Assembly: GCA_024679065.1 (NCBI GenBank)
Contig: JAGIQG010000009.1
Location: 81,220,001-81,284,000 of the forward strand
DNA from: Sphyrna mokarran
Lineage: Eukaryota
Length of the DNA: 64,000 nucleotides
Direction of reading: 5' to 3'
How positions within the stretch are numbered: position 1 is the stretch's first letter; each line of letters opens with the position of its first letter. Positions 5,635-62,300 of this stretch are shown here, in pieces. Below the pieces are notes generated by a model that was not told the DNA's origin, made no database searches, and saw only the letters and a list, made by a program, of their open reading frames with translations. Made by a program: the position numbers and the translations under genes.

Positions 5635-5669
5635 TCAGTCTGAGTTTGGTTCCTTTAGCAAACGTAAGG
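5635..5669 (-). CDS. IGKJ: Ig kappa-type J segment, cluster 1 (LTFAKGTKLRL)
   Basis: C CTT ACG TTT GCT AAA GGA ACC AAA CTC AGA CTG A followed by donor GTAAGT; flanked by a 23-RSS. Confidence 0.95.
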
Positions 5670-5708
5670 CACACTGACAGCTTCCAGTGCAGGAGCTGTA
5701 CAAAAACC
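5670..5708 (+). other. J1 recombination signal sequence, 23-bp spacer
   Basis: Heptamer CACACTG 5670-5676 (6/7), 23-nt spacer, perfect nonamer ACAAAAACC 5700-5708. Confidence 0.95.
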
Positions 5709-5973: not shown

Positions 5974-6348
5974 CTGTGTGTCCATTATTATATATTATAT
6001 AAAACTGTGGGATGTGTCAGTACAGGAGGTGGGACTGTGTGTCCATTATTATATATTATATAAAACTGTGGGATGTGTCAGTACAGGAGGTGGTGCTGTG
6101 TGTCCATTATTATATATTATATAAAACTGTGGGATGTGTCAGTACAGGAGGTGGGACTGTGTGTCCATTATTATATATTATATAAAACTGTGGGATGTGT
6201 CAGTACAGGAGGTGAGACTGTGTGTCCATTATTATATATTATATAAAACTGTGGGATGTGTCAGTACAGGAGGTGGTGCTGTGTGTCCATTATTATATAT
6301 TATATAAAACTGTGGGATGTGTCAGTACAGGAGGTGGGACTGTGTGTG
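5974..6348. repeat. 61-bp minisatellite, 6 copies, between J1 and V1
   Basis: Unit ctgtgtgtccattattatatattatataaaactgtgggatgtgtcagtacaggaggtggga; tccatt recurs every 61 nt from 5981 to 6286. Confidence 0.97.
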
Positions 6349-10239: not shown

Positions 10240-11161
10240 AAAAATGTATTCATTGACGGGATGTGGATGTCACTGACTGTCCCAACATTTATTGCCCATC
10301 CCTAATTGTCCTTGAGAAGGTGGTGATGAACTGCCTTCTTGAAATGCTGCAGTCCATGAGGTGTACGTACACCCACAGTGCTGTTAGGGAGGGATTTCCA
10401 GGATTCTGACCCAGCGACAGTGCATGAACAGAGATGTATTTCCATTTCAGAATGGCATGTGGCTTGGAGGGGAATCTCCTGGTGATGTTGATCCCAGGGA
10501 TCTGCTACATTTGTCTTTCCAGATGAGAGTGGTCATGGTATTCAAAGGTGCTGCCTCAGGAACCTTGGTGAGTTCATGCAGGGCATCTTATAGATGGCAC
10601 ACACTGCTGCCACTGTTCGACAGTGGTGGAGAAACTTAATGTTTGTGAATGGGGTGCCAATCAAGTGGTGCTGCTTTGTTCTGGATGATGTTGAGCTTTT
10701 TGAGTGTTGCTGGAGCTCTACTCATCCAGACAAGTGGAGAGTATTCCATCACACTCCAGACTTGTGCCTTGTCGATGGTGGAGAGGCTTTGGAGAGTCAG
10801 GATGTGAGTTACTCGCTGCAGGATTCCTATCCACTGACCTTCTCTTGTAGCTACAGTATTTATAGGCTGGTCCAGTTCAGTTTCTGGTCAATCATAACCA
10901 ACAGGATTTTACAGTGTGGGATTCAGTGATGGTAATGACATTGAATGTCAAGGGGAGATGTTAAAATTCTCTCATGTTGGGGATGGTGATTCCGTGGTAC
11001 TGATGTGGCATGAATGTTACTGCTTCAATATCTGAGGAGTTGTGAATGGTGCTGAGCATTGTGCAATCATCAGTGAACATCCCCACTTCTGAAGGTCATT
11101 ACTGAAGCAGCTGAAGATGGTTGTGTCTCAGACACGACCCTGAGGAATTCCTGCAGTGATG
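10240..11161 (-). mobile_element. Degenerate L2/CR1-group LINE 3' part; paralogue at about 39040-39955
   Basis: Minus-strand RT C-terminal peptide (STIYKAQVWSVMEYSPL in the paralogue) and a 3' tail containing gggcaataaatg. Confidence 0.75.
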
Positions 11162-11537
11162 TCCCAGGATAACTCCCTCCTGACTGTATCCCACTGTGCC
11201 TTCTGTGCTGGGAGATTGGAGGTAGTGAACACGGTTCACCATTTTCTCCCGTCTCAGTAACAAACATCCAGCTGCTCTGAGCTCCTTCTTTCACTTCCTC
11301 TGTTGGTTACGTTTCAATCTTCCGATCTGACAGTCTTTGCAGTTATTTTTGACACTGGGGATTTGTGCTGTGGTCTGAATCTCTAACAATAACTGTCCAA
11401 TCAGTGAAAAGAACAACAGCTCAGAGCAGTCAGGACTGAGGAGCCAGGCTCACTGGGAAACACATTGGGAAGATCAAAGCCATGGTCTTCAGCTCCCGAT
11501 ACAAACTCCATCCCTCCCCCTGAGCACTGTCTGCTGC
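11162..11537. promoter_or_regulatory. Candidate upstream enhancer: E-box CAGCTG (11269-11274), EICE (11289-11300), RUNX TGTGGT (11369-11374)
   Basis: By eye identical to 39957-40332; its left part is an inverted copy of sequence 3' of C. Confidence 0.5.
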
Positions 11538-14040: not shown

Positions 14041-17000
14041 GAGGAGAGCATCACGGCGGTGCAGAGGGAGGACAATACAGAGGAGTTAGGAGTGGAGTCA
14101 CTGTGGGTGGAGTTGAAGAATAGAAAGGGGGTGATTACTTTGCTAGGGGTGTATTATAGGCCACCCCACAGCCCGCGGGTAGTTGAAGAAGGCATATGTA
14201 AAGACATTTTGGATAGGTGCAGAAAGAACAGAGTCGTTATAGTGGGAGTTTTTAATCTCCCAAGGGTGGATTGGAAAGTACCGAGAGCTGGGGTTTTGGA
14301 CGGGCAGGAATTTGTAAAATGTGTACTGGAAGGATCGTTGGAGCAGTATGTGGCTAGCCCGACTGGAGAAGGGGCTATATTGGATTTAGTTCTGAGTAGT
14401 GAGCCAGGGCAGGTGGTTGATGTTGTAGTAGGGGAACATGTGGCTAACAGTGACCACAATTCTGTCCCCTTTAGGGTACAGATAGAAAAGGATGCAAGTT
14501 GCCCTAGGGGCAGGGTGCTGAATTGGGGGAAGGCTAACTATGGTCTTATTAGACAGGAACTTACGGAAACTGATTGGGAACGGTTGTTTGAGGGTAAGTT
14601 CACGCTAGGCATGTGGGACTCTTTCAAGGGAATACTGAAAATGTTGCAAGATAGATATGTGCCAGCTAAGAGGAAAGATGGGAAAGGTAGGATAAGAGAG
14701 CCGTGGATTACTAGGGATACTGAGGACTTGGTTAGGAAGAAAAGAGAGGTGTATGATAGGTCAAAGCAGCTGGGAACGGAGACAGCGTTGGAGGAGTATA
14801 GAGAGAGCAGGAGGGGGCTCAAACAGGGAGTTAGAAGGGCAAAAAGGGGCATGAAATGATCTTGGCGGATAGGATTAAGGAAAATACAAAGGCTTTTTAC
14901 TCCTATGTTAGGAATAAAAGAGTGGTTAGAGGAAAAATCAGACCTCTTAGGGACAGAGGAGAGGAACTGTGCTTAGAGCCTGAGGGAATGGCGGAGATCC
15001 TGAATGAATAATTTGCATCGGTATTCACAAAGGAGAGGGGCCAGTTGACAGCTCCTATCTCTGAGGGAGCTGTGGACCAGTTGAGGGAAATTTCCATACC
15101 AAGGAGGAAGTGTTAGAGCTTCTAGGTAGCATTAAAACTGATAAATCTCCGGGGCCTGATGGCATTTGTCTCAGGCTGCTGAGGGAGGTGTGTGGTGAAA
15201 TTGCTGGGCCTCTGATACAAATCTTTGTCTCTTCTTTGAACACAGGTGAGGTCCCAGAGGACTGGAGAATAGCTAATGTTGTATCGTTGTTTAAAAAGGG
15301 TAGTAGGGATAACCCTGGGAATTATAGGCTGGTGAGTTTGACGTCAGTGGTAGGGAAGTTGTTGGAGGGGATTCTTAGAGATAAGATGTACAGGCACTTA
15401 GAGCGTTGTGATCTGATTAGGGATACGCAACATGGATTTGTTAAGGGGAGGTCACGCCTTACATATCTGGTAGAATTTTTTGAGGAGGTGATGAAAACGG
15501 TGGACGAAAGGTGAGCCGTTGATGTCGTTTATATGGATTTTAGTAAGGCGTTTGACAAAGTCCCTCATGGGAGGTTAGTTGAGAAGGTCAAGGCAAAGGG
15601 GATACAAGGACAGGTAGTTAGCTGGATAAGTAACTAGCTTAGTAATAGGAGACAGAGAGTAATAGTGGAAGGGTGTTTTTCTAACTGGATGTCGGTCACT
15701 AGCAGTGTGCCGCAGGGCTCGATACTGGGACCTCTTCTATTTGTAAAATATATAAATGACTTGGAAGAGGGAGTAAGTGGAGTGATCAGCAAGTCTGCAG
15801 ACGATACAAAGATGGCTGGACTTGCGGATAGTGAGGAGCATTGTCAGGCGATACAGCAGGACATAGATAGGCTGGTGGCTTGGGCAGATAGATGGCAGAT
15901 GGAATTCAATCCTGATAAATATGAGGTGATGCATTTCAGGAGAAAGAATGTAGTGGGGAAGTATATGATAAAGGGTAGACCTATTAAGAGTATAGAAACG
16001 CGGAGGGACCTGGGGGTGCAGGTGAACAACTCTCTGAAGGTGGCAGAGCAAGTGGAGAAGGTTGTGACGAAAGCATATAGTATGTTAGCCTTTATAGGAA
16101 GGGGTATAGAGTACAAGAGCTGGCCTTTAATGTTGCAGTTGTATAAAACGTTGGGTAGGCCTCATTTGGAATACAGCGTCTAGTTCTGGACACCTTACTA
16201 CCGGAACGACGTGGAGACTCTGGAGAGAATGCAGAGGAGGTTTACCAGGATGCTGCCTGGTATGGAAGGTCTGAGTTACGAGGAGAGGTTAGGAAAATTG
16301 GGACTGTTTTCCTGAGAAAGACATAGACTTAGAGGAGATCTAATAGAGGTGTACAAGATTATGAGGGGCATAGATAGAGTAAACAGGGTAAAGCTTTTTC
16401 CTAGGATGGAGTCAAATAGCACGAGGGGTCACGGGGTTAGGGTGAGGGGGGGTAAGGTATAATTTGGATGCTAGAGGGAGTTTTTTCACACAGAGGTTGG
16501 TGGGGGTATGGAATGCACTACCAAGTAAAGTGGTGGAGGCAGGTACTCTGGAGTTATTTAAGAAAGACTTAGATGGGCACATGAACAGAATGGGAATGGA
16601 GGGGTTTAGAAAACTGATTTAAAATAGGAATCATGAGCCTTGGGAGTCCCTGGGAAGTATGTAAATAGATGATGATATTGATGTACTTGTTTTTATCCGA
16701 CAGGTGCGTTGGTCCACCTTGTTGTCTGACAAGGGGCATACACGTGATGGGTCGTGAGAGGGCTGCTCTTGGATTTTTTTTCCGAGAGTATCCTAGTACA
16801 TCGTTAGTGTACGCTTGACCTGGACCATTTGATGGGCAACTCGACAGCTCAGTGACAATTGCTGTGCTGTGCAAATACCTGTGTCTGTGGGAGTTTGTGC
16901 ATTCTCCCCGTGCTTGTGTGGGTTTTCTCCGGGTGCTCCGGTTTCCTCCCACATCCCAAAGATGTGCTCTTAGGCTAATTGGCAAAACAAATTCTCTCTA

Positions 17001-17999: not shown

Positions 18000-20826
18000 C
18001 ACAAAATGGACTTGGAGCAATTCTATCCCATAGACTGGAGGATGGAATGGAGAGGCTAAATTCATTTGCTTTGAGGACTTTGTCAGACGTTGAGAAAATT
18101 TCCTCACAAATTGACATAGAAAGCCCAGCAGTTATCCACACAGTGAAAAATTTCACCAATATGTCTATGGGCGGCATTTCACCATCGTGTCAGACCATAA
18201 GCCATTGTTGGGACTTTTCCAGGACATTAAGCCAGTGCCACCTATTGCCTCTGCCAAGGTGCAGAGATGGGCATTGCTGCTGGCACTAAACAGCTAAACC
18301 TTCCAGCATAGGCCGGGAAAACCGATCTCAAATGCAGATGCATTGAGCCGCCTGCCGCTACCACAGACCATACCGTCACCGCCTGTTCCACAGGAGATAG
18401 TATTGGCTCTGCATTATTTGGATACCCTGCCTGTTTCAGCAGCCCACATTCAGATGTGGACAGATAGGGAGCTGGTGTTAGCAAAGGACAAGAAAATGGT
18501 ACTGACCGGGTGGCACTTTGACAAGGCAGAGCAAATGAAGCTGTATTTACATTGCAGGGACCAGATACCCTGTGAAGAGGGGTATCAGTTTCATAGAACA
18601 TAGAACATAGAACATTACAGCGCAGAACAGGCCCTTCGGCCCTCGATGTTGCGCCGACCAATTAGGAACAAGCAGTGACTCTCTAACCTAAACCATTCCC
18701 TTTTCATCCATAAACTTATCTACTAACCTCTTAAATGCCACCAAACTTAGCGCATTTACAACTGACGCAGGCAAGGCATTCCATACCCTTATCACCCTCT
18801 GGGTAAAGAACGTACCTCTAACATTGTCCTAAAACGACCACCCCTTAATTTAAAGCTATGTCCCCTCGTGCTAGCTTTCTCCATCCTAGGAAAAAGGCTA
18901 TCACTGTCCACCCTATCTAAACCTCTAATCATCTTATATGTTTCAATAAGGTCTCCTCTTAGCCACCTTCTTTCTAACGAAAACAACCTCAACTCTCTCA
19001 GCCTCTCTTCATAAGACCTGCTTCATACCAGGCAACATCCTGGTAAACCTCCTCTGTACCCTCTCCAATGCCTCCACATCTTTCTTATAATGCGGGGACC
19101 AGAACTGTACACAATACTCCAAGTGCGGCCGCATTAGAGTTTTGTACAGTTGCAACATGACGTTGCAGCTCCGAAATTCAATCCCCCTACCAATAAAAAC
19201 TAAGACTCCGTATGCCTTCTTAACAACGTTATCAACTTGATTGCCAGCTTTCAGGGATCTATGCACACATACACCAAGATCCCTCTGTTCATCAACACTA
19301 TTAAGAGTCCTACTATTAGCTCTATACTCTACACATTTGTTATTCCTGCCAAAGTGAATTACCTCACACTTTTCCACATTAAACTCCATTTGCCACCTCT
19401 CAGCCCAGCTCTGCAACTTGTCCAAATCTGTCTGCAAACTATAACACCCCTCTTCACTATCTACCACTCCTCCAACTTTGGTGTCACCCGCAAATTTAAT
19501 AATCCATCTTTCAATACCCTCATCCAGATCATTTATAAAAATTACAAACAGCAGGGGCCCCAAAACAGATCCCTGAGGTACACCACTAGTAACTGAACTC
19601 CATGATGAATATCTCTCATGAACCACCACCATAAATGTTCTATGTTCTATGGTCTTCCTGAAGTGTTGCTGTCAGACAACGGAGCAGCATTCACACTGAT
19701 GAATCTCAGACTTTGATCAAGCCTAATGACATTGGTCATGTCAGGCCAGCCCCCGACCATCCTGCCTCGAGTGGCTTGGTGGAGCGAGCCATGCTGATGT
19801 TCAAGGCTTCATGTGAAGCATGGACCACTGCCATTGCAATTGGCCAGTTATTTGCTGTCCTACAACACTATACCTCACACTATCACTGGGGTCATGTCGG
19901 GGTCACACCCGCAGCGTTATTAATGGGTCGGTGCCTATGTACCTGTTTGGATTTATTGTTCCCAAATTTGTTGGAGAGGATGGAGGCTCAGCGAGCCTCT
20001 CAGAAAGGGTATCGTGGCTTTCAGAAAGGGGACAGATTGTTTAATGATGGCAACCTCATGTTGAGAGGGAATTTGAATGGTGGACCCAGTTGTGGAGAAG
20101 GCAGGACCAGTCTCATATTTGGGGGAGACACAGGGCTGTGGAGCTAAGGAACATATTGGTTACCTACGCAAGAGATTAGAGCAAGCTCCAGGAGATGAGC
20201 AATTGGGCCCCGTAACCAGTTTGTGTGTACCAGCCTCTGAACAAGACAATTCCATGTCCATTGTGTGGCCAAGGCAGCGTCTGGCTTGGGTGGGTGAGGA
20301 AGAGAAAAGGAGCTGCCTAGGGCCTTGCTCCAGAGATGGTTAGCACATCCACCCCATCAGTGGATCCTGTATCGATGGCTGCTGAAGTGCCCCTGATAGA
20401 GTTGCAGCGTTCCGCAAGGTTCCAGAAATCTCTGGACCAGCTGACATTATGAACTGTCTTTCCCTGGTGTCCCTCCTGTAATATTGTTGTTTCTCTGCCT
20501 GTGTGTTAACTGTTGTACTTTTTGTTTGATCACAGGGAGTCCAAGATGTTCCAGGGGAAGGAGTGTGTGAGCCTGGCCCCTTTAAGGGGCAATCCTTCAC
20601 AGGCCACATGACCAGACCGGAGCCAATGGACTGTGAGGGTGTGGACCTGGGCCAATCGGGAGTGAGGGTGATCATTCCTGGGACTGGAGGCTTCAGTTGG
20701 AGTCAGGATGTTGTTGGTAATAGATCTGTCTGCTTGTGTTGTTAAACCCTTCATTGGAAATACTTCTTCTCATCAATAAAGCCTTTAGTGAGTTATTTCC
20801 AAATCCACTCTCCTCCACTTATTACA
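18000..20826 (+). mobile_element. Ty3/Gypsy LTR-retrotransposon remnant (RNase H/integrase) with probable 3' LTR at 20564-20826
   Basis: Integrase core LPEVLLSDNGAAFT and APDHPASSGLVERA; polypurine tract aggggaaggag (20553-20563) followed by a TG...ACA 263-bp segment containing AATAAA. Confidence 0.75.
18595..19651 (-). mobile_element. 5'-truncated CR1 inserted in the Gypsy remnant, unit-1 specific
   Basis: ORF 19009-19632 (GVPQGSVLGP, FAGDTK) and (catagaa)n tail; absent from the paralogous site at about 44538. Confidence 0.9.
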
Positions 20827-23929: not shown

Positions 23930-24784
23930 CATGGCAGATGTGTCCCTACTTATGAATGTGATTTGCACGGACAACGTTGGGTGCAGCTAATCTGCCTCTG
24001 GAACAGCCTTGGATCCTTTCGTTCTTCTTTTCATCTGAACATTGCACAGAATTAGAGGAATTCCCTTTGGAAAATAATGTCAAAATTATAATGGCAGGAA
24101 CTAAAAACCCAACAGTCAAAAATTTGGGAAAATATTTTAAAATATGGATGGGGGGATATATATTTTGAAATATTTTCCCAAAGACTGTCAGATTGGAAGA
24201 TTGAAATGTAACCAACAGAGGAAGTGAAAGAAGCAGCCGAATATTTGTTACTGAGACGGGAACAATTATTTGAACAACATTAAACTTTCAGACTCAAAAG
24301 AAATAAAAACACTAGCAGTGGAGGGGGTGGGAGGAATCTTGGAGACTGACACCGACAGGAACAATCTAAACAGCTGAAACTCCCATTTCCTCAGTCCCTG
24401 CCCGTCACTGCTGAGGAACTCCCCGAGGGGAACCCTCTCGCTCTGACACTCTCTCTCTCTCTCTCTGCTTCTGTCTTTCTCTCCTCTCTCTCACTCTCCC
24501 TCCTGGATGAAAGCTTAAATAACTTGCAGCAAATTAATTCATTTCCATCTTTCTAATTATTTGAAAAATTCACTGAGTGGCATTTTGAGTCCCCAATCTA
24601 AATTTTTCCCTCTCACTCACTGCACCTGACACCAGGAAATGGTCAATACTGTTTTACTGTACCAGTTCGAGCAGCTGGATGTTTGTTACTGAGACGGGAG
24701 AAAATGGTGAACCGTGTTCACTACCTCCAATCTCCCAGCACAGAAGGCACAGTGGGATACAGTCAGGAGGGAGTTATCCTGGGA
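23930..24784. promoter_or_regulatory. Candidate 3' enhancer downstream of C (cluster 2): octamer-like TGATTTGCAC 23959-23968, EICE 24218-24229, kB-type GGGGAGTTCC (minus) 24415-24424, E-box 24672-24677; paralogue at 54160-54997
   Basis: A cluster of B-cell factor motifs in mostly non-TE sequence 1.3-2.1 kb 3' of the C stop codon, conserved in cluster 3. Confidence 0.5.
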
Positions 24785-25129
24785 ATCCTCAACAACATTC
24801 CAGACTCCATGTAGTCTCTCGGTACCATGTCAAACACAGACAAGGAAACCTCCTCTGGTCACGACATACCGTCCCCCCCTCAGCTGATGAACCAGTTCTC
24901 CTCCGTGTTGAACACCACTTGGAGGAAGCACTGAGGGTGGGAAGGACACAGAATATACTCTGGGTGGGGAATTCAATGTCCATCACCAAGAGTTACTTGC
25001 TGAAACAATGGGAGTAGTGAGACCGTGTGAGAGGGGGAGGTGGTGAATATGGGATGGACAGCTGTGACTGAGGGCATTTAAAGACAAAATTGTAAATTAT
25101 GTTTATATGTTGAAATGCCCTGTTTGTGA

Positions 25130-25238
25130 ACAGAATTCCCACTCACCTGATGAAGGGTCAGTGCTCCGAAAGCGAGTGGTTTGTGCTACTAAATAAACCT
25201 GTTGGACTTTAACCTGGTGTCAGACTGCTTACTGTGTC
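25130..25238 (+). mobile_element. Penelope-like palindromic element remnant with a degenerate hammerhead core (CTGATGA 25147-25153, GAAA 25168-25171)
   Basis: cacCTGATGAagggtcagtgctccGAAAgcgagtg followed by an aataaacctgttggactttaacctggtg arm; the cleavage-site U is replaced by G. Confidence 0.7.
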
Positions 25239-25454
25239 ATTGATTGACAGTCCAAGCAACCAATCAGGACAATCACTTGTTGAAGTGCAGCCAATCAGCT
25301 GATGGAGAGGTGGGACATTTCCAAAGCACTCACCAGACATATACTGAATATTCTTAATGTTTATTACCTTTTACACATTGACATTGACAGAAAAAAGACT
25401 TGAATAAACAGCCCAGCCAGAGGAAGCTGGAGAAGTTCACAGGGAGAATGGAGG

Positions 25455-25460
25455 TTTATT
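25455..25460 (-). terminator. Probable polyadenylation signal of the cluster 2 light-chain mRNA (second signal at 25360-25365)
   Basis: First canonical AATAAA shared with cluster 3 (55612-55617) downstream of the C stop. Confidence 0.65.
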
Positions 25461-25718
25461 AAAACACTTGTGGAGATTTTCTCAATAACATGAGAATCCT
25501 GTCCCTTTAAACAGTGACTAAAGCTTCAATTGTAACTGCAGGGTGAGCAGGAAGGAGGTCTGGTTTACTGAAGCAGATACTTCAGAGGGTCACATTATTT
25601 CTGAACAGCTGACAGTATTCAGCACTCCCAGTAAAGGCACAGCACAGGGTTAATAGAGAGTAAAGCTCCCTCTACAATATCCCAACAATGTTCTTTAACC
25701 CCTGACCCTCAGAAGTGT

Positions 25719-25928
25719 TGATGTAGAGATGCCGGCGTTGGACTGGGGTAAACTCAGTAAGATTTTACAACACCAATTTTAAATCCAACCAATTTATTTG
25801 GTAGTAAATTCGCGAGCTTTCGATGCTATATGCACCTTCCTCAGGCAAATGCAGTGTTCTGCATTTAGAATGAGGGAATTTAGTTACTACCAAATAAATT
25901 GGTTGGATTTAAAATTGGTGTTGTAAAA
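25719..25928 (-). mobile_element. Penelope-like palindromic insertion in the predicted C 3' UTR, with 12-bp target-site duplication
   Basis: cctcagaagtgt duplicated at 25707-25718 and 25929-25940; single copy (empty site) at about 55864-55875; perfect 45-bp inverted arms 25763-25807 and 25884-25928. Confidence 0.88.
25808..25850 (-). ncRNA. Minimal type I hammerhead ribozyme motif
   Basis: AUUUGC-CUGAGGA-A-GGUGC(AUAUA)GCAUC-GAAA-GC-UC^GCGAAU: complete core, 6-bp stem I, 5-bp stem II, vestigial palindromic stem III (AGCU). Confidence 0.75.
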
Positions 25929-26061
25929 CCTCAGAAGTGTCTCAGACCCAGTCTCAGGAAGGAAGAGAATTGTAATTCAATGCTGACAGTGACCTTTACC
26001 CTCCCAGCTCACCCCTGTTCTATTCCAAGTTGTGTCTCCTCTGTGGACTGTCTCTAACACT

Positions 26062-26390
26062 CTAGGCACATTCTGAACTCCTGACACTCTTGCTGAGGGG
26101 AGAGGAGAGGCTCACGTGGGTGAGGGCACAAGAGAAGCGAGCGTTGGACTCCCAGTCGGAGCCAGAGAGGGTCAGCAGGCTGCTGACACTGTAGGTGTTG
26201 TCCGAAGCTCGCAGGTAGTTGCTGGTCTGAATCCCGTTGGAAATGGCTGCACCGTCCTTCTTCCACTTCACCTCCACCTCATCGGGATAGAAGTGATCGG
26301 CAAGGCACACCAGGGTGGCAGTGCCCTTGGTCTTGACCTCCTCCGGGGAGGGGGGCAGCAGGGTCAGCGTGGGTTGTGAATTCTCACGGG
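26062..26390 (-). CDS. IGKC: Ig kappa-type constant exon, cluster 2 ((T)RENSQPTLTLLPPSPEEVKTKGTATLVCLADHFYP...FSCALTH...SSECA*)
   Basis: Intact C1-set domain with both Cys, Trp and the penultimate inter-chain Cys; ttccag acceptor in phase with the J donor; TAG at 26062-26064. Confidence 0.97.
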
Positions 26391-26439
26391 CTGGAACAGA
26401 AGAGAAGGAATTTTAATCACTGCCATTTTCAGCCTTTCA

Positions 26440-27300
26440 TCATCCCGAATATTAACTGGGATCAAATCAGTGTCAATGTTTGAATGTTGCAGAATTCTGA
26501 AAATCCATTCGAGGGGAACGTTTTTAACCAGTCCGGAACAATCCCAACAAGAGAAGGGTCAGTTTTAGCAGTTTTAGAGAATGAAACTCAGCATGTGGAA
26601 GGTGTATCAGTGAGAGAGCATTTGGGTAATAATGATCATAATAGATTTAGAGTAGCTCCGGAAAAGGGGAAAGATCGATCAAGAGTAAACGTTTTAAATG
26701 GGAAAAGGCCAATTTCACTAAACTGGAATTTGCCAAAATGGAAAGGAAACAGTGACTTGAAGGTAAATCAGTGTCAGAGCAGTGGGAGGATATTCGAGCT
26801 GGAGATAGAGTTCAGGACATATATGTTCATCAAGCAATAGTGTGGGACATTGCAAAGAGAATAACTAAGGATTAAATAGGGCTGATTGGAGAGCAAAAAG
26901 GTAACTTGTGTGTGGAAAGAGAAGACGTATAGCTGGTTCTTAATGAATAATTTACATCAAATATCATAAGTGGGAGAGGCAAAGTTGACATTGTAGGTTC
27001 AAGAGGGGAGGGATTGTGAAATAATTAATGGGATAATGATAGTGAGCGAGGAGATATTAATGTATTTATCATCTTTTAAAATGGAGAAATTCCCAGGGCC
27101 GGGTGAAATATATCCCAGGATGCGAAGAGAAGAACAGGAAGAAATAACAGAGACTCTGACCATTATTTTCCAATCCTCTCTGGGTATAGGTGTCAGTGTA
27201 GGTGGACTGGATGATGGAGAATGCTTTTTAAAATTAAAAGCTGGTGGAATCCAAGGGAAAGTGGCACATTGGACTACAAATTCATTTAATGTCTAAGGGT
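26440..27300 (+). mobile_element. Old degenerate CR1 ORF2 fragment in the J-C intron; paralogue at about 56370-57230
   Basis: EHLGNNDHN and KFPGPGEIYPR remnants. Confidence 0.7.
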
Positions 27301-33456: not shown

Positions 33457-33491
33457 TCAGTCTGAGTTTGGTTCCTTTAGCAAACGTAAGG
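33457..33491 (-). CDS. IGKJ: Ig kappa-type J segment, cluster 2 (LTFAKGTKLRL)
   Basis: Identical to J1, with GTAAGT donor. Confidence 0.95.
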
Positions 33492-33530
33492 CACACTGAC
33501 AGCTTCCAGTGCAGGAGCTGTACAAAAACC
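33492..33530 (+). other. J2 recombination signal sequence, 23-bp spacer
   Basis: CACACTG 33492-33498, 23-nt spacer, ACAAAAACC 33522-33530. Confidence 0.95.
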
Positions 33531-33742
33531 TCTGTCTCTGACTCACTGACTCATTCATCTCTTTCTCTCTCACTCTTTCTCTCTCCCTGTTCCTCTCTCT
33601 CTGTTTCTCTCAATATCCCTGTGTTTTATTGGGAGTGTTGAGGATTCTAATTTGAGATGATAAATCTTTCAGCTGCTCTTCATATGTGAACATGGAGAGT
33701 AAGAGAGAAACTCGAGGCCTTCAGTGAGCGGTGGACACCACA

Positions 33743-34969
33743 GTGTGTCCATTATTATATATTATATAAAACTGTGGGATGTGTCAGTACAGGAGGTGGG
33801 ACTGTGTGTCCATTATTATATATTATATAAAACTGTGGGATGTGTCAGTACAGGAGGTGGGACTGTGTGTCCAATATTATATATTATATAAAACTGTGGG
33901 ATGTGTCAGTACAGGAGGTGGGACTGTGTGTCCATTATTATATATTATATAAAACTGTGGGATGTGTCAGTACAGGAGGTGGGACTGTGTGTCCATTATT
34001 ATATATTATATAAAACTGTGGGATGTGTCAGTACAGGAGGTGGGACTGTGTGTCCATTATTATATATTATATAAAACTGTGGGATGTGTCAGTACAGGAG
34101 GTGGGACTGTGTGTCCATTATTATATATTATATAAAACTGTGGGATGTGTCAGTACAGGAGGTGGGACTGTGTGTCCATTATTATATATTATATAAAACT
34201 GTGGGATGTGTCAGTACAGGAGGTGGGACTGTGTGTCCATTATTATATATTATATAAAACTGTGGGATGTGTCAGTACAGGAGGTGGGACTGTGTGTCCA
34301 TTATTATATATTATATAAAACTGTGGGATGTGTCAGTACAGGAGGTGGGACTGTGTGTCCATTATTATATATTATATAAAACTGTGGGATGTGTCAGTAC
34401 AGGAGGTGGGACTGTGTGTCCATTATTATACATTATATAAAACTGTGGGATGTGTTAGTACAGGAAGTGGGACTGTGTATCCATTATTATATATTATATA
34501 AAACTGTGGGATGTGTCAGTACAGGAGGTGGGACTGTGTGTCCATTATTATATATCATACAAAACTGTGGCTTGTGTCAGTGCAGGAGGTGGGACTGTGT
34601 ATCCATTATTATATATTATATAAAACTGTGGGATGTGTCAGTACAGGAAGTGGGACTGTGTATCCATTATTATATATTATATAAAACTGTGGGATGTGTC
34701 AGTACAGGAGGTGGGACTGTGTGTCCATTATTATATATCATACAAAACTGTGGGATGTGTCAGTACAGGAGGTGGGACTGTGTGTCCATTATTGTATATC
34801 ATACAAAACTGTGGCTTGTGTCAGTACAGGAGGTGGGACTGTGTATCCATTATTATATATTATATAAAACTGTGGGATGTGTCAGTACAGGAAGTGGGAC
34901 TGTGTGTCCATTATTATATATTATATAAATCTGTGGGATGTGTCAGTACAGGAGGTGGGACTGTGTGTG
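33743..34969. repeat. 61-bp minisatellite, 20 copies, between J2 and V2
   Basis: Same unit as at 5974; tcca register runs from 33748 to 34907 (19 x 61 nt). Confidence 0.97.
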
Positions 34970-38900: not shown

Positions 38901-39956
38901 GGTGTTATATAAATTCAGGTTCTGTGTAGATTTTGAATGGGGACAGTGGTGAAGGCTTTTGCAGTCAAATATCCTGCTGACAGGATCCAGACTTCAACAC
39001 ACAGAATGGGACATTGTGTAAAGTAGGAATTCTTAAAAATGTATTCATTGATGGGATGTGGGTGTCACTGGCTGTCCCAACATTTATTGCCCATCCCTAA
39101 TTGTCCTTGAGAAAGTGGGGATGAACTGCCTTCTTGAACTGCTGCAGCCCATGAGGTGTACACACACCCACTGTGCTGTTAGGGAGGGATTTTCAGGATT
39201 CTGACCCAGTGACAGTGCATGAACAGAGATGTATTTCCATTTCAGAATGGCATGTGGCTTGGAGGGGAATCTCCTGGTGATGTTGATCCCAGGGATCTGC
39301 TACACTTGTCTTTCCAGATCATAGTGGTCATGGGTTTCAAAGGTGCTGCCTCAGGAACCTTGGTGAGTTCATGCAAGGCATCTTATAGATGGCACACACT
39401 GCTGCCACTGTTCGACAGTGATGGAGGGATTTAATGTTTGTGAATGGGGTGCCAATCAAGTCGGACTGCTTTGTTCTGGATGATGTTGAACTTCTTGAGT
39501 GTTGCTGGAGCTCTTCTCATCCAGACAAGTGGAGAGTATTCCATCACACTCCAGACTTGTGCCTTGTAGATGGTGGAGAGGCTTTGGAGAGTCAGGATGT
39601 GAGTTACTCGCTGCAGGATTCCTATCCACTGACCTTCTCCTGTCGCCACACTATTTATAGGCTGGTCCAGTTCAGTTTCTGGTCAATCATAACCAACAGG
39701 ATTTTACAGTGGGGGATTCAGCAATGGTAATGACATTGAATGTCAAGGGGAGATGTTAAAATTCTCTCTTGTTGGGGATGGTGATTCTGTGGTACTGATG
39801 TGGCATGAATGTTACTGCTTCAATATCTGAGGAGTTGTGAATGGTGCTGAGCATTGTGCAATCATCAGTGAACATCCCCACTTCTGAAGGTCATTACTGA
39901 ATCAGCTGAAGATGGTTGCGTCTCAGACACGACCCTGAGGATCTCCTGCAGTGATG

Positions 39957-40332
39957 TCCCAGGATAACTCCCTCCTGACTGTATCCCACTGTGCCTTCTG
40001 TGCTGGGAGATTGGAGGTAGTGAACACGGTTCACCATTTTCTCCCGTCTCAGTAACAAACATCCAGCTGCTCTGAGCTCCTTCTTTCACTTCCTCTGTTG
40101 GTTACGTTTCAATCTTCCGATCTGACAGTCTTTGCAGTTATTTTTGACACTGGGGATTTGTGCTGTGGTCTGAATCTCTAACAATAACTGTCCAATCAGT
40201 GAAAAGAACAACAGCTCAGAGCAGTCAGGACTGAGGAGCCAGGCTCACTGGGAAACACATTGGGAAGATCAAAGCCATGGTCTTCAGCTCCCGATACAAA
40301 CTCCATCCCTCCCCCTGAGCACTGTCTGCTGC
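39957..40332. promoter_or_regulatory. Candidate upstream enhancer of cluster 2 (EICE 40084-40095)
   Basis: Identical to 11162-11537. Confidence 0.5.
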
Positions 40333-41132: not shown

Positions 41133-43330
41133 ACATAGAACATAGAACATTACAGCGCAGAACAGGCCCTTCGGCCTTTGATGTTGCGCCAACCAATTAA
41201 GAAAAAGCAATGACCCTGTAACCTAAACCATTCCCTTTTCATCCATAAACTTATCTACTAACCTCTTGAATGCCACCAAACTTGGCGCATCTACAACTGC
41301 AGCAGGCAGGGCATTCCATCCCCTTACCACCCTCTGGGTAAAGAACCTACCTCTGACATCCATCCTATAACCACCACCCCTTAATTTAAAGCTATGTCCC
41401 CTCGTGCTAGCTTTCTCCATCCTAGGAAAAAGGCTATCACTGTCCACCCTATCTAAACTCTAATCATCTTATATGTTTCGATTAGGTCCCCTCTTAGCCG
41501 CCTCCTTTCTAACGAAAACAACCTCAAATTCCTCAGCCTCTCCTCATAAGACCTGCCCTCCATACCAGGCAACATCCTGGTAAACCTCCTCTGTACCCTC
41601 TCCAATGCCTCCACATCTTTCTTATAATGCGGGGACCAGAACTGCACACAATACTCCAAGTGCGGCCGCACGAGAGTTTTGTACAGTTGCAACATGACGT
41701 TGCGGCTCCGAAATTCAATCCCCTACCAATAAAAGCTAAGACTCCATATGCCTTCTTAACAACCTTCTCGACTTGACTGCCTACTTTCAGGGATCTATGC
41801 ACAAATACACAAGATCCCTCTGTTCATCAACACTATTAAGAATCCTACCATTAGCCCTATACTCTACACATTTATTATTCCTGCCAAAGTGCATTACCTC
41901 ACACTTTTCCACATTAAACTCCATTTGCCACCTCTCAGCCCAGCTCTGCAACTTGTCCAAGTCTCTCTGCAAACTATAACACCCATCTTCACTATCTACC
42001 ACTCCACCGACTTTAGTGTCATCTGCAAATTTACTAATCCATCCTTCAATACCCTCATCCAGATCATTTATAAAAATTACAAAACAGCAGGGGCCCCAAA
42101 ACAGACCCCTGAGGTACACCACTTGTCACCGAACTCCAAGATGAATATCTCCCATCAACTACCACCCTCTGTCTTCTATCTGCTAGCCAATTCCTAACCC
42201 AATTAGCTAAATCACCCTCTATCCCATACATCTGCATTTTCTGTAGAAGTCTTCCATGGGCCACCTTATCAAACGCCTTACTAAAGTCCATACATACCAC
42301 ATCAACTGCCTTACCCCCATCCACCTCTTTGGTCACTTTTTCAAAAAACTCAATGAGGTTAGTAAGGCACGACCTAACCTTCACAAAACCATGATGACTA
42401 TCTCCAATCAATTCATTTCTCTCTAAATAACTATAAATCCAATCCCTAATAATTCTTTCCAATACTTTACCCACAACAGAAGTAAGACTCACCAGTCTAT
42501 AATTCCCAGGAAAGTCTCTCTTCCCCTTCATGAACAATGGGACCACATTCGCTATCCTCCAGTCTCCCAGCACTGTACCTGTAACCAATGACGACCTGAT
42601 GATCAGAGCCAGAGGCTCTGCAATCGCCTCTCTCGCCTCCCAGAGAATCCCGTCCGGCCCAGGGGACTTATCTAACTTCAAACCCTCAAGAATATCTAGC
42701 ACATCCTCCTTATCCACTTCAATACTTTCTAGTTTGCAACCCTGTATCCCAGCGTTCTCCACAACTACATTTACATCTCCCTGCATGAATACTGAAGAGA
42801 AATATTTGTTCAGTGCCTCTCCAATCTCTTCAGGCTCCACGCACAACTTCCCACTACTGTCTCTGACTGGCCCTAACCTTGCCCTAACCAATCTTCTATT
42901 CTTAACATATCTAAAGAAAGCTTGAGCATTCTCCTTGATCCTATCAGCCAATGTCTTCTCATGTCCTCTTTTAGCTCTTCTCAACTCACTCTTTAGCTCC
43001 CTCCTGGCTAATCTATAGCACTAACTGAGCCTTCAAGCCTTTCCAGTGCATTAACTGAGCCTTCAAGCCTCATCCTGACATAAGCCTCCTTTTTCCTTTT
43101 AACCAGCGAATTAACTTTTTTATTACAGCATGGTTCCCTTACTCGACCATTTCCTCCTTGCCTGACAGGGACATACTTATCAAGGACTCGCAGTAGCTGC
43201 TCCTTGAATAAGCTCCACATTTCAGATGTTCCCAGCCCCTGTAGTTTCCTAGTCCAACCTATGCACCCTAATTCTCTCCTAATAGCCTCATAATTACCAT
43301 TCCCCCAGCTATAACTACTGCCCCCAGGTT
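41133..43330 (-). mobile_element. 5'-truncated CR1 (about 2.2 kb of ORF2), unit-2 specific
   Basis: ORFs 42064-42984, 41787-42122 and 41453-41695 with RT motifs; (catagaa)n tail; absent at about 17290. Confidence 0.92.
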
Positions 43331-54159: not shown

Positions 54160-55269
54160 CCTACTTATGAATGTGATTTGCACGGACAACGTTGGGTGCA
54201 GCTAATCTGCCTCTGGAACAGCCTTGGATCCTTTCTTTCTTCTTTTCATCTGAACATTGCACAGAATTAGAGGAATTCCCTTTGGAAAATAATGTCAAAA
54301 TTATAATGGCAGGAACTAAAAACCCAACAGTCAAAAATTTGGGAAAATATTTCAAAATATGGATGGGGGATAGATATTTTGAAATATTTCCCCAAAGACT
54401 GTCAGATTGGAAGATTGAAACGTAACCAACAGAGGAAGTGAAAGAAGCAGCCGAATATTTGTTACTGAGATGGGAACAATTATCTGAACAACATTAAACT
54501 TTCAGACTCAAAACAAATAAAAACACAAGCAGTGGAGGGGGTGGGAGGAATCTTGGAGACTGACACCGACAGGAACAATCTAAACAGCTGAAACTCCCAT
54601 TTCCTCAGTCCCTGCCCGTCACTGCTCAGGAACTCCCCGAGGGGAACCCTCTCGCTCTGACACTCTCTCCCTCTCTCTCTGCTTCTGTCTTTCTCTCCTC
54701 TCTCTCACTCCTCTCTCTGGTTGAAAGCTTTAGCAACTTGCAGCAAATTAATTCATTTCCATCTTTCTAATGATTTGAAAAATTCACTGAGTGACATTTA
54801 GAGGGAAAATCTAAATTTTTCCCTCTCACTCACTCCACCTGACACCGGGAAATGGTCAATACCGTTTTACTGTACCAGTTCGAGCAGCTGGATGTTTGTT
54901 ACTGAGACGGGAGAAAATGGTGAACATTGTTCACTACCTCCAATCTCCCAGCACAGAAGGCACAGTGGGATACAGTCAGGAGGGAGTTATCCTGGGAATC
55001 CTCAACAACATTCCAGACTCATTCATTACTTGCTGAAACAATGGGAGTAGTGAGACCGTGTGAGAGGAGAAGGCCAAGGGGGAGGGGGTGAATATGGGAT
55101 GGACAACTGTGACTGTGATGGTTTAAACCCAGCAACTTTCAGTTTCTTTTCTGTTTTCAATCTTGTCAGTCTTCTAACTTGTCAGTAAGATTCCAGATCT
55201 AACTGATCGTTTTCAAATGATAGATCATTAGATTTGAATCCAATCTTCTGCTGATGTGTCATTGATGAT

Positions 55270-55395
55270 GATGTGGAGGTGTCGGCGTTGGACTGGGGTA
55301 AACACAGTAAGAAATCTCACACCACCCGGCTAAAGTCCAACAGGTTTATTTAGTCCTGTTGGACTTTAACCTCGTGTCAGACTGATTACTGTGTC
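55270..55395. mobile_element. Penelope-like palindromic element remnant with the centre deleted
   Basis: gatgtggaggtgtcggcgttggactgggg end plus taaagtccaacagg / cctgttggacttta inverted arms. Confidence 0.65.
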
Positions 55396-55611
55396 ATTGA
55401 TTGACAGTCCAAGCAACCAATCAGGACAATCACTTGTTGAAATGCAGCCAATCAGCTGATGGGGAGGTGGGACATTTCCAAAGCACTCACCAGACATATA
55501 CTGAATATTCTTAATGTTTATTACCTTTTACACATTGACATTGACAGAAAAATGACTTGAATAAACAGTCCAGCCAGAGGAAGCTGGAGAAATTCACAGG
55601 GAGAATGGAGG

Positions 55612-55617: not shown

Positions 55618-55995
55618 AAAACACTTGTGGAGATTTTCTCAATAACATGAGAATCCTGTCCCTTTAAACAGTGACTAAAGCTTCAATTGTAACTGCAGGG
55701 TGAGCAGGAAGGAGGTCTGGTTTACTGAAGCAGATACTTCAGAGGGTCACATTATTTCTGAACAGCTGACAGTATTCAGCACTCCCAGTAAAGGCACAGC
55801 ACAGGGTTAATAGAGAGTAAAGCTCCCTCTCCAATATCCCAACAATGTTCTTTAACTCCTGACCCTCAGAAGTGTTTCAGACCCAGTCCCAGGAAGGAAG
55901 AGAATTGTAATTCATTGCTGACAGTGACCTTTACCCTTCCAGCTCACCCCTGTTCTATCCAAGTTGTGTCTCCTCTGTGGACTGTCTCTAACACT

Positions 55996-61915: not shown

Positions 61916-62300
61916 ATAGCACCCATTAATACCTACATTAATACTCATTAATACATCAGTCCCATTATAACAGGAATCTATTTGACATACATTCTCTGCA
62001 CTTCCTCTGGAGCAAAAATATCCTTCCTGACATAGGGAGACCAAAACTGTGCACAATATTCCCAGTGCTGTCTCACCAAAGCCCTGTATAACTACAGCAG
62101 ATCAGACTTATGAAGACATAGAGCAGATACGAAGGAACTTTTCCCCTTTTAGCAGTAGATTCAAAAACCAGGGAGCATAAATTTAATTTCAGAAGCAGAA
62201 AATTTTGAGGGATTGAAGGAAAAACCTTTTCGCTCAGAGGGTGTTGGGAATCTGGAACTCACTGCCTGAAAGTGTGGTGGAGACAGGAACCCTCACAACA

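What the first reader, a model, noticed from the sequence alone, without database searches (positions are those of the whole stretch)
25808..25850. Sense-strand hammerhead ribozyme in the predicted 3' UTR of one Ig light-chain gene
Seen: on the minus (mRNA) strand, about 210 nt after the C stop and before the shared AATAAA (25455), the RNA reads AUUUGC CUGAGGA A GGUGC AUAUA GCAUC GAAA GC UC^GCGAAU. The core is complete, stems I and II pair, and the predicted cut is between 25814 and 25813. It arrived with a TSD-flanked insertion that cluster 3 lacks. Established: Penelope-like elements carry minimal type I hammerheads whose short palindromic stem III favours dimer cleavage; an extra A after A9 is tolerated; a 3' UTR hammerhead lowers expression of rodent Clec2 mRNAs. 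Inference: cleavage could remove the poly(A) tail and attenuate this cluster, possibly more strongly at high transcript levels if dimers are needed. An adjacent hairpin (aaatgcag-tgtt-ctgcattt, 25847-25866) competes for stem I, so activity may be low or conditional.
Basis: partly seen in the sequence, partly recalled or inferred. Interest (0 to 1): 0.85.

Follow-up and report, generated by a model that had tools for sequence, protein, structure and literature searches.

The report
Penelope retroelement hammerhead in antibody UTR
A small jumping-gene fragment of the Penelope type, carrying its usual miniature self-cutting RNA motif, has landed in the tail end of one antibody light-chain gene, but the motif is probably locked in an inactive shape and is most likely an ordinary passenger.

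Summary
The motif is real. On the minus strand at 25850..25808 there is a complete minimal type I hammerhead (HHR). It lies 212 nt after the stop codon of an Ig light-chain C exon. My descriptor finds 1 site in the window and none in 300 shuffles.

It sits in a 210-bp insertion flanked by a 12-bp target-site duplication. The sister cluster has a precise empty site. The insertion has three parts:
- an inverted 45-nt 5'-truncated copy;
- a forward 121-nt copy holding the HHR;
- a 44-nt tail at one end only.

This is the published signature of Penelope-like element (PLE) insertions (PMC8557442, PMC11167929).

The regulatory reading is not supported:
- The HHR fold lies 7.4-7.8 kcal/mol above the predicted fold, in which the core and stem I are paired elsewhere.
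- Helix III is a 4-nt palindrome that can only form in a dimer, and the predicted duplex is weak (-2.5 kcal/mol).
- Published single PLE HHRs showed no detectable cleavage (PMC4209133).
- No Rfam hammerhead model matches.
- RNA contigs mostly show transcripts without the insertion.

The scan's own unchecked notes list 101 hammerhead/Penelope findings elsewhere in this genome. Verdict: an ordinary PLE copy, of low interest.

The parts
25808..25850 (-). Minimal type I hammerhead motif. Stem I is AUUUGC/GCGAAU. The core is CUGAGGA plus an extra A. Stem II is GGUGC/GCAUC with loop AUAUA. Then GAAA and helix III reduced to the palindrome AGCU, with C17 at 25814. The predicted cut is 25814^25813.
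   Evidence: 1 locus in the window, 0 of 300 shuffles. The features match those listed for PLE hammerheads in PMC4209133 (passages).
25847..25866 (-). Competing hairpin AAAUGCAG-AACA-CUGCAUUU, which takes four letters of the 5' strand of stem I.
   Evidence: I10. It forms in the minimum-energy folds.
25851..25883 (-). 5' part of the forward 5'-truncated copy. It includes AUUC and CCUCA, which in the predicted fold pair with GAAU of stem I and UGAGG of the core.
   Evidence: Alignment with copy B.
25763..25807 (-). Right arm: the 45 nt of the forward copy that follow the hammerhead. It contains AATAAA at 25798-25793.
   Evidence: 45 of 45 complementary to 25884-25928; I1.
25884..25928 (-). Left arm: an inverted 5'-truncated copy of the right arm, without the tail. 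Together with the right arm it forms a 45-bp perfect hairpin stem in the RNA.
   Evidence: (fold -97.2 kcal/mol, z -12.3, 0 of 200 shuffles as stable).
25719..25762 (-). One-sided 44-nt tail at the 3' end of the forward copy. It is shared with copy C and absent from copy B, copy B' and the inverted arm.
   Evidence: In one search many contigs of 3 runs diverge at 25718-25720, which marks the 3' boundary of the family.
25707..25718 (.). Target-site duplication, downstream copy (CCTCAGAAGTGT on the + strand).
   Evidence: (D5).
25929..25940 (.). Target-site duplication, upstream copy.
   Evidence: (D5).
55864..55876 (.). Empty target site in cluster 3, with a single copy of the duplicated 12 nt.
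26062..26390 (-). Ig light-chain C exon of cluster 2 with its stop codon (26064-26062). It is spliced to J at 26390.
   Evidence: (in 3 of 4 runs contigs continue at 26390 into J-like letters). (J at about 33464).
25360..25460 (-). The two downstream AATAAA signals shared with cluster 3 (25460-25455 and 25365-25360). RNA contigs end at 25342-25386.
25113..25246 (+). Copy B of the same repeat family, on the opposite strand and downstream of the gene. Its hammerhead is degenerate (stem II mismatch, G at position 16.1) and it has no tail.
55262..55403 (-). Copy C/B' in cluster 3: a fold-back of two arms with a tail on one side and no hammerhead centre.

Best explanation
[quoted passage not shown] It was made by target-primed reverse transcription, which left a 12-bp target-site duplication. 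It consists of an inverted 45-nt 5'-truncated copy, a forward 121-nt copy and a 44-nt tail at one end.

The forward copy carries the minimal type I hammerhead that PLE terminal repeats normally contain. That motif belongs to the element's own life cycle, where tandem copies can pair through the palindromic helix III. Here it is a single sense copy. In the mRNA the two arms should form a 45-bp stem. Inside that stem, the 5' strand of stem I and part of the catalytic core are paired elsewhere. Self-cleavage is therefore expected to be negligible, and the motif is a passenger rather than a regulator of the gene.

Shown: the motif, the architecture of the insertion, the empty site, the gene context and the predicted folds. 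Inferred: mobilisation by a PLE enzyme, and lack of activity in cells.
For: Motif: complete and not due to chance.

Insertion:
- 12-nt TSD and a precise empty site in cluster 3.
- Arms complementary at 45 of 45 positions.
- A tail in the forward copy and in copy C, but not in the inverted arm, copy B or copy B'.

Folding:
- Minimum energy -97.2 kcal/mol, z -12.3.
- The hammerhead-constrained fold is 7.4-7.8 kcal/mol worse, with an ensemble fraction of about 4e-7.
- The helix III duplex is worth -2.5 kcal/mol. The predicted dimer of two centres uses the UCGCGA palindrome instead.

Literature (passages):
- A single PLE minimal hammerhead showed no detectable cleavage (PMC4209133).
- In Xenopus, hammerhead-bearing PLE derivatives that overlap exons tend to lie in 3' UTRs (bioRxiv 10.64898/2026.07.22.740005, Results section).

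RNA contigs:
- The tail and right-arm bins reach summed depths of 2,249 to 36,775 in 4 of 4 runs, so the family is common in transcripts.
- Joints that skip the insertion are present in 3 of 4 runs.

Unchecked scan notes describe the same kind of fold-back mini-elements elsewhere in this genome.
Against: - No PLE reverse transcriptase or GIY-YIG endonuclease was found in the window. Of the 11 ORFs of 170 aa or more, I scanned 10. Seven matched LINE-type RT or AP-endonuclease families and three matched nothing. The ORF left out lies in the minisatellite. Mobilisation by a PLE is therefore inferred from architecture alone.
- The tail is 44 nt, slightly longer than the published 30-40 bp.
- No Rfam hammerhead model matches.
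- Secondary-structure energies ignore tertiary contacts, proteins and co-transcriptional kinetics, so low-level cleavage in cells is not excluded.
- Stem I differs from copy B at a paired position (A-U in B, G-C here). This hints that the source lineage kept the fold under selection, so the motif may be competent in another context.
- The RNA evidence is from contigs only and cannot show RNA ends.
Confidence: 0.78

Rival explanations
1. The sense hammerhead cleaves the light-chain mRNA, alone or as a dimer between two mRNAs at plasma-cell transcript levels. This removes the poly(A) tail and lowers the output of this cluster.
For: - The core is intact, both stems pair, and the motif is in sense within the 3' UTR.
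- Light-chain mRNA is very abundant in plasma cells (general knowledge).
- A 3' UTR hammerhead exists in Clec2 genes (PMC6155905, passage). That it lowers expression is my recollection.
- In run X1 the only listed contig on the insertion's centre has depth 20.7, against 1,665.6 for the joints without the insertion. This would fit low steady-state levels, but equally fits one cluster among many.
Against: - The hammerhead fold is 7.4-7.8 kcal/mol above the competing fold, which sequesters stem I and UGAGG of the core.
- Helix III is only a 4-nt palindrome, with a duplex of -2.5 kcal/mol and millimolar affinity.
- There is no second sense copy in the transcript.
- A single PLE minimal hammerhead was inactive in vitro, and dimers were weak (PMC4209133, PMC6765202, passages).
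- No reads end at the hammerhead site of an Anolis PLE (PMC11167929, passage).
- A contig in X1 lies across the cut site without differences (record 4), but with only 8 laid letters on one side.
Confidence: 0.07
2. The insertion does affect the gene, but through other features than the ribozyme. One is the 45-bp perfect RNA duplex, which could draw editing, nuclear retention, double-strand-specific decay or dicing. The other is the extra AAUAAA at 25798-25793, which could shorten the 3' UTR.
For: - The arms are complementary at 45 of 45 positions and the fold is very stable.
- Rfam's only matches at E below 0.01 are 3 long-hairpin microRNA-precursor models and the bicoid 3'-UTR element. All are far below their gathering scores, which reflects the hairpin shape.
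- AATAAA lies inside the right arm.
- That long duplexes in 3' UTRs can alter mRNA fate is established knowledge that I recall and did not check here.
Against: - No A-to-G differences were listed inside 25719-25928, although long contigs barely cover that stretch.
- The AAUAAA would be buried in the duplex.
- There is no expression data specific to cluster 2.
Confidence: 0.13
3. The motif is a chance look-alike in an unrelated repeat, for example a SINE moved by the LINE-type enzymes present in the window.
For: - No Rfam hammerhead match.
- Only LINE-type RT and AP-endonuclease ORFs were found in the window.
- A 12-bp TSD also fits LINE-type insertion.
Against: - None of 300 shuffles gives a match to the descriptor.
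- A second, diverged family copy aligns across the same core and stems (copy B).
- The fold-back duplicates the same 45 nt and there is a one-sided tail, as published for PLEs.
- The element has no A-rich or simple-repeat 3' end.
Confidence: 0.02

Closest known systems
Minimal type I hammerheads of Penelope-like elements (Cervera and de la Pena 2014, PMC4209133; Lunse et al. 2017, seen only as a reference in PMC6765202)
   Same: [quoted passage not shown]
   Different: It is a single copy inside a host mRNA 3' UTR, enclosed by a 45-bp fold-back stem. A roughly 23-nt hairpin-forming segment sits in the 5' strand of stem I, and copy B lacks it. No activity data exist.
PLE insertion architecture (Craig et al. 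2021, PMC8557442; Frangieh et al. 2024, PMC11167929)
   Same: Strong 5' truncation; an adjacent inverted 5'-truncated copy; a tail at one end only; a TSD.
   Different: It is very short (210 bp) with no ORF. The tail is 44 nt against the published 30-40 bp. No autonomous partner was seen in the window.
Non-LTR retrozymes of animals (PMC7229834; bioRxiv 10.64898/2026.07.22.740005)
   Same: Non-autonomous, PLE-related, bearing a type I hammerhead. They are reported in one cartilaginous fish. In Xenopus the few exon overlaps tend to be in 3' UTRs.
   Different: Retrozymes are tandem repeats that yield circular RNAs. Here there is one forward unit plus an inverted fragment and no tandem.
Discontinuous hammerhead in the 3' UTR of Clec2 genes (PMC6155905, passage)
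   Same: A hammerhead on the sense strand of a 3' UTR of an immune-system gene.
   Different: The Clec2 motif is type III, with a very large helix I, and is conserved across mammals. Here the motif is a minimal type I, a recent transposon copy, absent from the sister cluster.

Membership tests
Hammerhead ribozyme, PLE-type minimal type I | Conserved core C3-U4-G5-A6-N7-G8-A9, G12-A13-A14, A15.1-U16.1, and H17 (any base but G) | tested here: met
   CUGAGGA, GAAA, U at 25815, C at 25814.
Hammerhead ribozyme, PLE-type minimal type I | Helices I and II can pair, with helix I open-ended | tested here: met
   Helix I has 6 pairs (1 G-U) and helix II has 5 pairs (1 G-U). However, they are not part of the minimum-energy fold in context.
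Hammerhead ribozyme, PLE-type minimal type I | [quoted passage not shown] | tested here: met
   Extra A at 25837; G at 25836 pairs with C at 25822; AGCU at 25818-25815.
Hammerhead ribozyme, PLE-type minimal type I | Match to a curated hammerhead covariance model (Rfam) | tested here: not met
   No hammerhead family matched at the gathering score over the whole window, or at E up to 10 on 261 nt and on 71 nt. My inference is that minimal motifs without helix III fit these models poorly.
Hammerhead ribozyme, PLE-type minimal type I | Site-specific self-cleavage | not testable with these tools
   The contigs cannot show RNA ends.
Hammerhead ribozyme, PLE-type minimal type I | Covariation in the stems across family copies | tested here: inconclusive
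   Only one other copy with a hammerhead is in the window (copy B). One paired position of stem I differs on both sides (A-U in B, G-C here). Two sequences are too few.
Penelope-like element insertion | Target-site duplication and a precise empty site | tested here: met
   12-nt repeat (D5); empty site at 55864-55876.
Penelope-like element insertion | An inverted 5'-truncated copy next to the forward copy | tested here: met
   25884-25928 is the reverse complement of 25763-25807 at 45 of 45 positions. Copy C/B' has the same layout.
Penelope-like element insertion | A 30-40 bp tail present at one end only | tested here: met
   A 44-nt tail at 25762-25719. It is present in the forward copy and in copy C, and absent from the inverted arm, copy B and copy B'. 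It is slightly longer than published.
Penelope-like element insertion | Homology to an element that encodes an RT with a GIY-YIG endonuclease | tested here: inconclusive
   Of the 11 ORFs of 170 aa or more, I scanned 10. Seven matched LINE-type RT or AP-endonuclease families and three matched nothing. No genome-wide search was possible.
Non-LTR retrozyme | Head-to-tail tandem repeats, each with a hammerhead | tested here: not met
   There is one forward unit only and no direct repeat of it.
Clec2-type 3' UTR hammerhead | Type III discontinuous topology with a very large helix I, conserved between species | tested here: not met
   The topology here is type I. The motif is absent from the sister cluster.

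The most novel reading that the evidence does not exclude
The hairpin that competes with stem I, together with the dimer-only helix III, makes this a concentration- or factor-dependent ribozyme. On this reading it self-cleaves only at the extreme light-chain mRNA levels of plasma cells, and so gives one antibody gene cluster its own post-transcriptional brake. This would be a transposon ribozyme caught early in domestication.
Probability: 0.04. Interest if true: 0.75.

Novelty: new member of a known kind. Interest (0 to 1): 0.2.

Why it matters
If the hammerhead were active, this would be a rare natural case of a ribozyme tuning an antibody gene, and a parallel to the Clec2 3' UTR hammerhead. 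As it stands, it matters in three smaller ways:
- It is a clean, datable example of Penelope-type fold-back insertion. It has a TSD, an empty site in a sister cluster, a one-sided tail and arms identical at 45 of 45 positions.
- It places a 45-bp perfect RNA duplex and an extra AAUAAA in the 3' UTR of an apparently intact V-J-C cluster. That makes a natural paired test against the sister cluster without the insertion.
- It is a caution for annotation: intact hammerhead motifs in this genome are mostly transposon cargo, and the scan has flagged about a hundred.

Tried and rejected
Rfam. I ran the whole window at gathering scores, 261 nt at E up to 10 and 71 nt at E up to 10. No hammerhead family matched. 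The only hits were far below their gathering scores: long-hairpin microRNA-precursor models, the bicoid 3'-UTR element, and weak ToxI, snoZ6 and SNORD15 matches. I read them as chance matches or reflections of the fold-back, not as microRNA genes.

More family copies in the window. A sensitive blastn and a loose core scan gave only copies A, B and C/B'. The loose scan's two other hits (11436 and 40231) are one duplicated sequence with no stem I or helix III, and I dropped them. With so few copies I built no covariance model.

The search of earlier findings. The search by sequence and by the words 'hammerhead UTR light chain' were blank.

Chance origin: rejected.

LINE twin-priming as the source of the inversion: considered and rejected. 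Here the inverted part duplicates the same 45 nt as the forward part, and the element has no A-rich end.

Retrozyme: rejected, because there is no tandem.

Lunse et al. 2017 (PMC5785218) is not held, so dimer kinetics come only from passages of PMC4209133 and PMC6765202. Supplementary figures of PMC4209133 (cleavage gels, vertebrate families) and of the 2026 preprint (3' UTR table, cartilaginous fish families) were not seen and may bear on activity and on whether this family is already catalogued.

I did not identify the species. I ran no protein homology search, because the Pfam C1-set match and the V, J and RSS anatomy were enough for the gene context. No DNA run was laid, so it is untested whether the insertion is polymorphic.

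Full report
OBSERVATION

The predicted cut is between 25814 and 25813.

I wrote a descriptor from the features that Cervera and de la Pena list for Penelope-type minimal hammerheads (PMC4209133, passages read). It asks for:
- an open helix I of 6 positions, at least 5 of them paired;
- CUGANGA, followed by an optional extra nucleotide;
- helix II of 4-6 pairs closed by G10.1-C11.1, with a loop of 3-8;
- GAAA, then a palindrome of 0-4 nt, then U and H.

It finds 1 locus in the window on both strands and none in 300 of 300 dinucleotide-preserving shuffles. The motif is therefore not a chance match.

Against this, Rfam gives no hammerhead match. That holds for the whole window at gathering scores, and for 261 nt and 71 nt at E up to 10. 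I take this to reflect the missing helix III of minimal motifs. That is my inference and was not tested.

GENE CONTEXT

- The minus strand 26388-26065 translates to a 108-aa C1-set immunoglobulin domain (E 2.8e-23) ending SECA*, with the stop at 26064-26062.
- A J segment with heptamer, spacer, nonamer and a GTAAGT donor lies at about 33464.
- An intact leader-intron-V gene with CACAGTG, a 12-bp spacer and ACAAAAACC lies at 35533-34975.
- The same V-J-C unit recurs about 30 kb away.
- In 3 of 4 runs (X1, X4, X5), RNA-like contigs join the C exon at 26390 to J-like letters.

Cluster 2 therefore looks like an intact light-chain cluster. The motif starts 212 nt after its stop codon, on the mRNA strand.

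AATAAA occurs on that strand at 25798-25793, 25460-25455 and 25365-25360. Contigs of the four runs reach 25342, 25352, 25354 and 25386. The first AATAAA is inside the insertion.

WHAT CARRIES THE MOTIF

- A 12-nt direct repeat lies at 25707-25718 and 25929-25940.
- Cluster 3 aligns to both flanks at 97.6-98.6% identity, with a single copy of those 12 nt (55864-55876) and nothing between them. So 25719-25928 (210 bp) is an insertion younger than the duplication of the clusters.
- Read on the minus strand, it consists of a left arm (25928-25884), a 76-nt centre that holds the hammerhead (25883-25808), a right arm (25807-25763) and a 44-nt tail (25762-25719).
- The left arm is the exact reverse complement of the right arm, 45 of 45.

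Two relatives are in the window.
- Copy B (25113-25246, + strand) aligns across the hammerhead and the arm at 66% identity. It has a degenerate hammerhead and no tail.
- Copy C/B' (55262-55403) is another fold-back of two arms, with the tail on one side only.

In alignment A1 the tail is present in 2 of 5 rows (A forward, C) and absent from 3 (B, B', A inverted arm).

In the laid contigs, many records from 3 runs (X1, X4, X5) diverge at 25718-25720. Short contigs cover just 25720-25762. The summed depth over the tail and right arm is 2,249 to 36,775 in 4 of 4 runs. This is a common, transcribed repeat family with a fixed 3' end.

IDENTIFICATION

Craig et al. (PMC8557442, passages) describe Penelope-like insertions as follows:
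- strongly 5'-truncated;
- often with an inverted 5'-truncated copy immediately adjacent, which forms inverted repeats;
- with a 30- to 40-bp tail often present at only one end;
- with hammerheads typically in the terminal repeats.

Frangieh et al. (PMC11167929, abstract and passages) tie the tail to two reverse-transcription start sites and call it a signature unique to PLEs.

The insertion here meets each point: TSD, inverted copy, one-sided tail and minimal hammerhead. The tail is slightly long at 44 nt.

What I could not show is a link to an RT/GIY-YIG element. Of the 11 ORFs of 170 aa or more in the window, I scanned 10. Seven matched LINE-type RT or AP-endonuclease families and three matched nothing. 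The one left out lies in the minisatellite.

The scan's own first-stage notes are unchecked. They list 101 findings with the words hammerhead, Penelope and ribozyme in this genome. They include fold-back mini-elements with a fixed arm/tail junction, one-sided tails and 12-bp TSDs. These agree with my reading but are not independent evidence.

DOES IT WORK AS A RIBOZYME HERE?

Fold in context.
- The 234-nt insertion with its TSDs folds at -97.2 kcal/mol (z -12.3; 0 of 200 shuffles as stable). The two arms form one long stem.
- Inside the stem, the predicted fold pairs AUUC with GAAU of stem I and CCUCA with UGAGG of the catalytic core. It also forms the AAAUGCAG/CUGCAUUU hairpin, which takes the 5' strand of stem I. 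Only stem II survives.
- Forcing stems I and II and leaving the core open costs 7.8 kcal/mol in the 93- and 234-nt contexts and 7.4 in the 76-nt centre. The ensemble fraction is about 4e-7, or 1.6e-6 for the centre alone.
- Even the bare 43-mer prefers another fold (fraction 1.4e-2).

Helix III. It is only A15.1-G-C-U16.1, so a productive helix III needs a second copy.
- No second sense copy is in the transcription unit.
- A dimer between two mRNAs rests on an AGCU/AGCU duplex of -2.5 kcal/mol, or -3.9 with flanks. That corresponds to a dissociation constant in the millimolar range.
- The predicted dimer of two centres pairs through the UCGCGA palindrome that spans the cut site, not through helix III.

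Published work (passages).
- A single Schistosoma PLE minimal hammerhead gave no detectable cleavage. Dimers and trimers gave low activity, mostly at non-physiological Mg2+ (PMC4209133).
- In Anolis no RNA-seq reads began or ended at the PLE hammerhead site (PMC11167929).

These energies ignore tertiary structure, proteins and folding during transcription. They make activity unlikely but do not exclude it.

RNA DATA

The look-up of sequencing runs gave 23 runs, none on record as RNA. I laid 4 of them (X1, X2, X4, X5), all as contigs, on 25000-26700.

- Coverage is confined to the C exon and UTR, with splicing to J in 3 of 4 runs, so they behave as transcriptomes.
- Joints that skip the insertion occur in 3 of 4 runs: 25706 to 25929 in X1 (2 contigs, depth 1,665.6) and in X2 (depth 16.8), and 25702 to 25929 in X5 (depth 134.7). 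These are the form of cluster 3 and similar clusters.
- The centre of the insertion has depth 0 in X2 and X4, and about 42 in X5.
- In X1, one listed 140-nt contig of depth 20.7 matches 25806-25902 without a difference. That contig lies across the cut site, but with only 8 laid letters on one side, and it could come from another copy of the subfamily.
- In X5, an 89-nt contig of depth 76 follows the UTR to 25718 and then runs into a tail-like sequence that differs from the window's. This points to a related insertion at the same site in that labelled organism.
- No differences were listed inside 25719-25928.

Contigs cannot show ends, strand or level. Of the records, 1,381 were not shown. These data neither support nor exclude cleavage or attenuation.

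MOST LIKELY MECHANISM

A PLE enzyme complex nicked the target with a 12-bp stagger and copied the 3' end of a family RNA from each side. One copy started at the tail-including site and ran 165 nt. The other started at the tail-less site and ran 45 nt. They were joined head to head. This step is inferred from the architecture and from PMC11167929 and PMC8557442.

The hammerhead came along as part of the terminal-repeat sequence. In the light-chain mRNA it sits inside a 45-bp duplex in a non-catalytic fold. Any effect on the gene is more likely to come from the duplex or from the extra AAUAAA than from self-cleavage. I rate the readings as follows:
- passenger: 0.78;
- effect through the duplex or the poly(A) signal: 0.13;
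- chance or non-PLE origin: 0.02.

COMPARISON AND NOVELTY

The motif meets the sequence-level definition of the PLE minimal type I hammerhead, and the insertion meets the PLE architecture. It is not a retrozyme, because there is no tandem. It is not a Clec2-type hammerhead, which is type III, discontinuous and conserved.

A 2026 preprint (10.64898/2026.07.22.740005; abstract and Results read) reports PLE-derived hammerhead repeats in one cartilaginous fish. It also notes that in Xenopus the few exon overlaps tend to be in 3' UTRs. Even the 3' UTR position therefore has precedent.

My literature searches turned up nothing on a hammerhead in an immunoglobulin gene. That is four keyword searches of an open-access library and is no proof of absence.

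I class this as a new member of a known kind, of low interest. It has a small chance of being an early stage of domestication.

Noticed in passing
window 24807-25198 versus 55020-55355: Downstream of the C gene the two clusters differ at an older Penelope-type fold-back. Cluster 2 keeps a long inverted part with a degenerate hammerhead (copy B). Cluster 3 keeps a short palindrome of two arms plus a tail (copy C/B'). A 12-nt repeat TGTGTCATTGAT seems to flank the cluster 3 element. This looks like different deletions of one ancestral palindromic insertion.
   Followed up: partly
window 25342-25460 (minus strand): RNA contigs of 4 runs run past the AATAAA at 25460-25455 and end at 25342-25386, near a second AATAAA at 25365-25360.
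   Followed up: partly
window 25718 (run X5): In a run labelled as another organism, a contig of depth 76 follows the UTR to 25718 and continues into a tail-like sequence. It has 2 extra letters and about 3 differences in 28 from the window's tail. This is either the orthologous insertion or an independent hit at the same target.
   Followed up: no
window 33740-34968 and 5974-6347: A 61-bp minisatellite of about 20 units lies between V and J of cluster 2, with a shorter array in the neighbouring cluster (self-blast ladder). It agrees with the scan note on a VNTR next to the V recombination signal.
   Followed up: no
window 33464-33500 and 5642-5680 (minus strand): The J segments encode F-A-K-G instead of the usual F-G-x-G. 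The same letters follow the C exon in the spliced contigs, so this J is used.
   Followed up: partly
window 48767-51248 (minus strand) and 14059-16183, 19009-19632, 42064-42984, 61393-61926: LINE-type ORFs (RVT_1 with an AP-endonuclease domain) lie between the clusters. The longest pair, 50472-51248 plus 48767-50467, looks like a nearly intact ORF2 split by one stop.
   Followed up: no
window 24669-24787, 11158-11277, 39953-40072: A 120-bp segment is 99% identical at three places, and inverted relative to the copy downstream of the C gene. It overlaps the scan note on a duplicated enhancer-like module.
   Followed up: no
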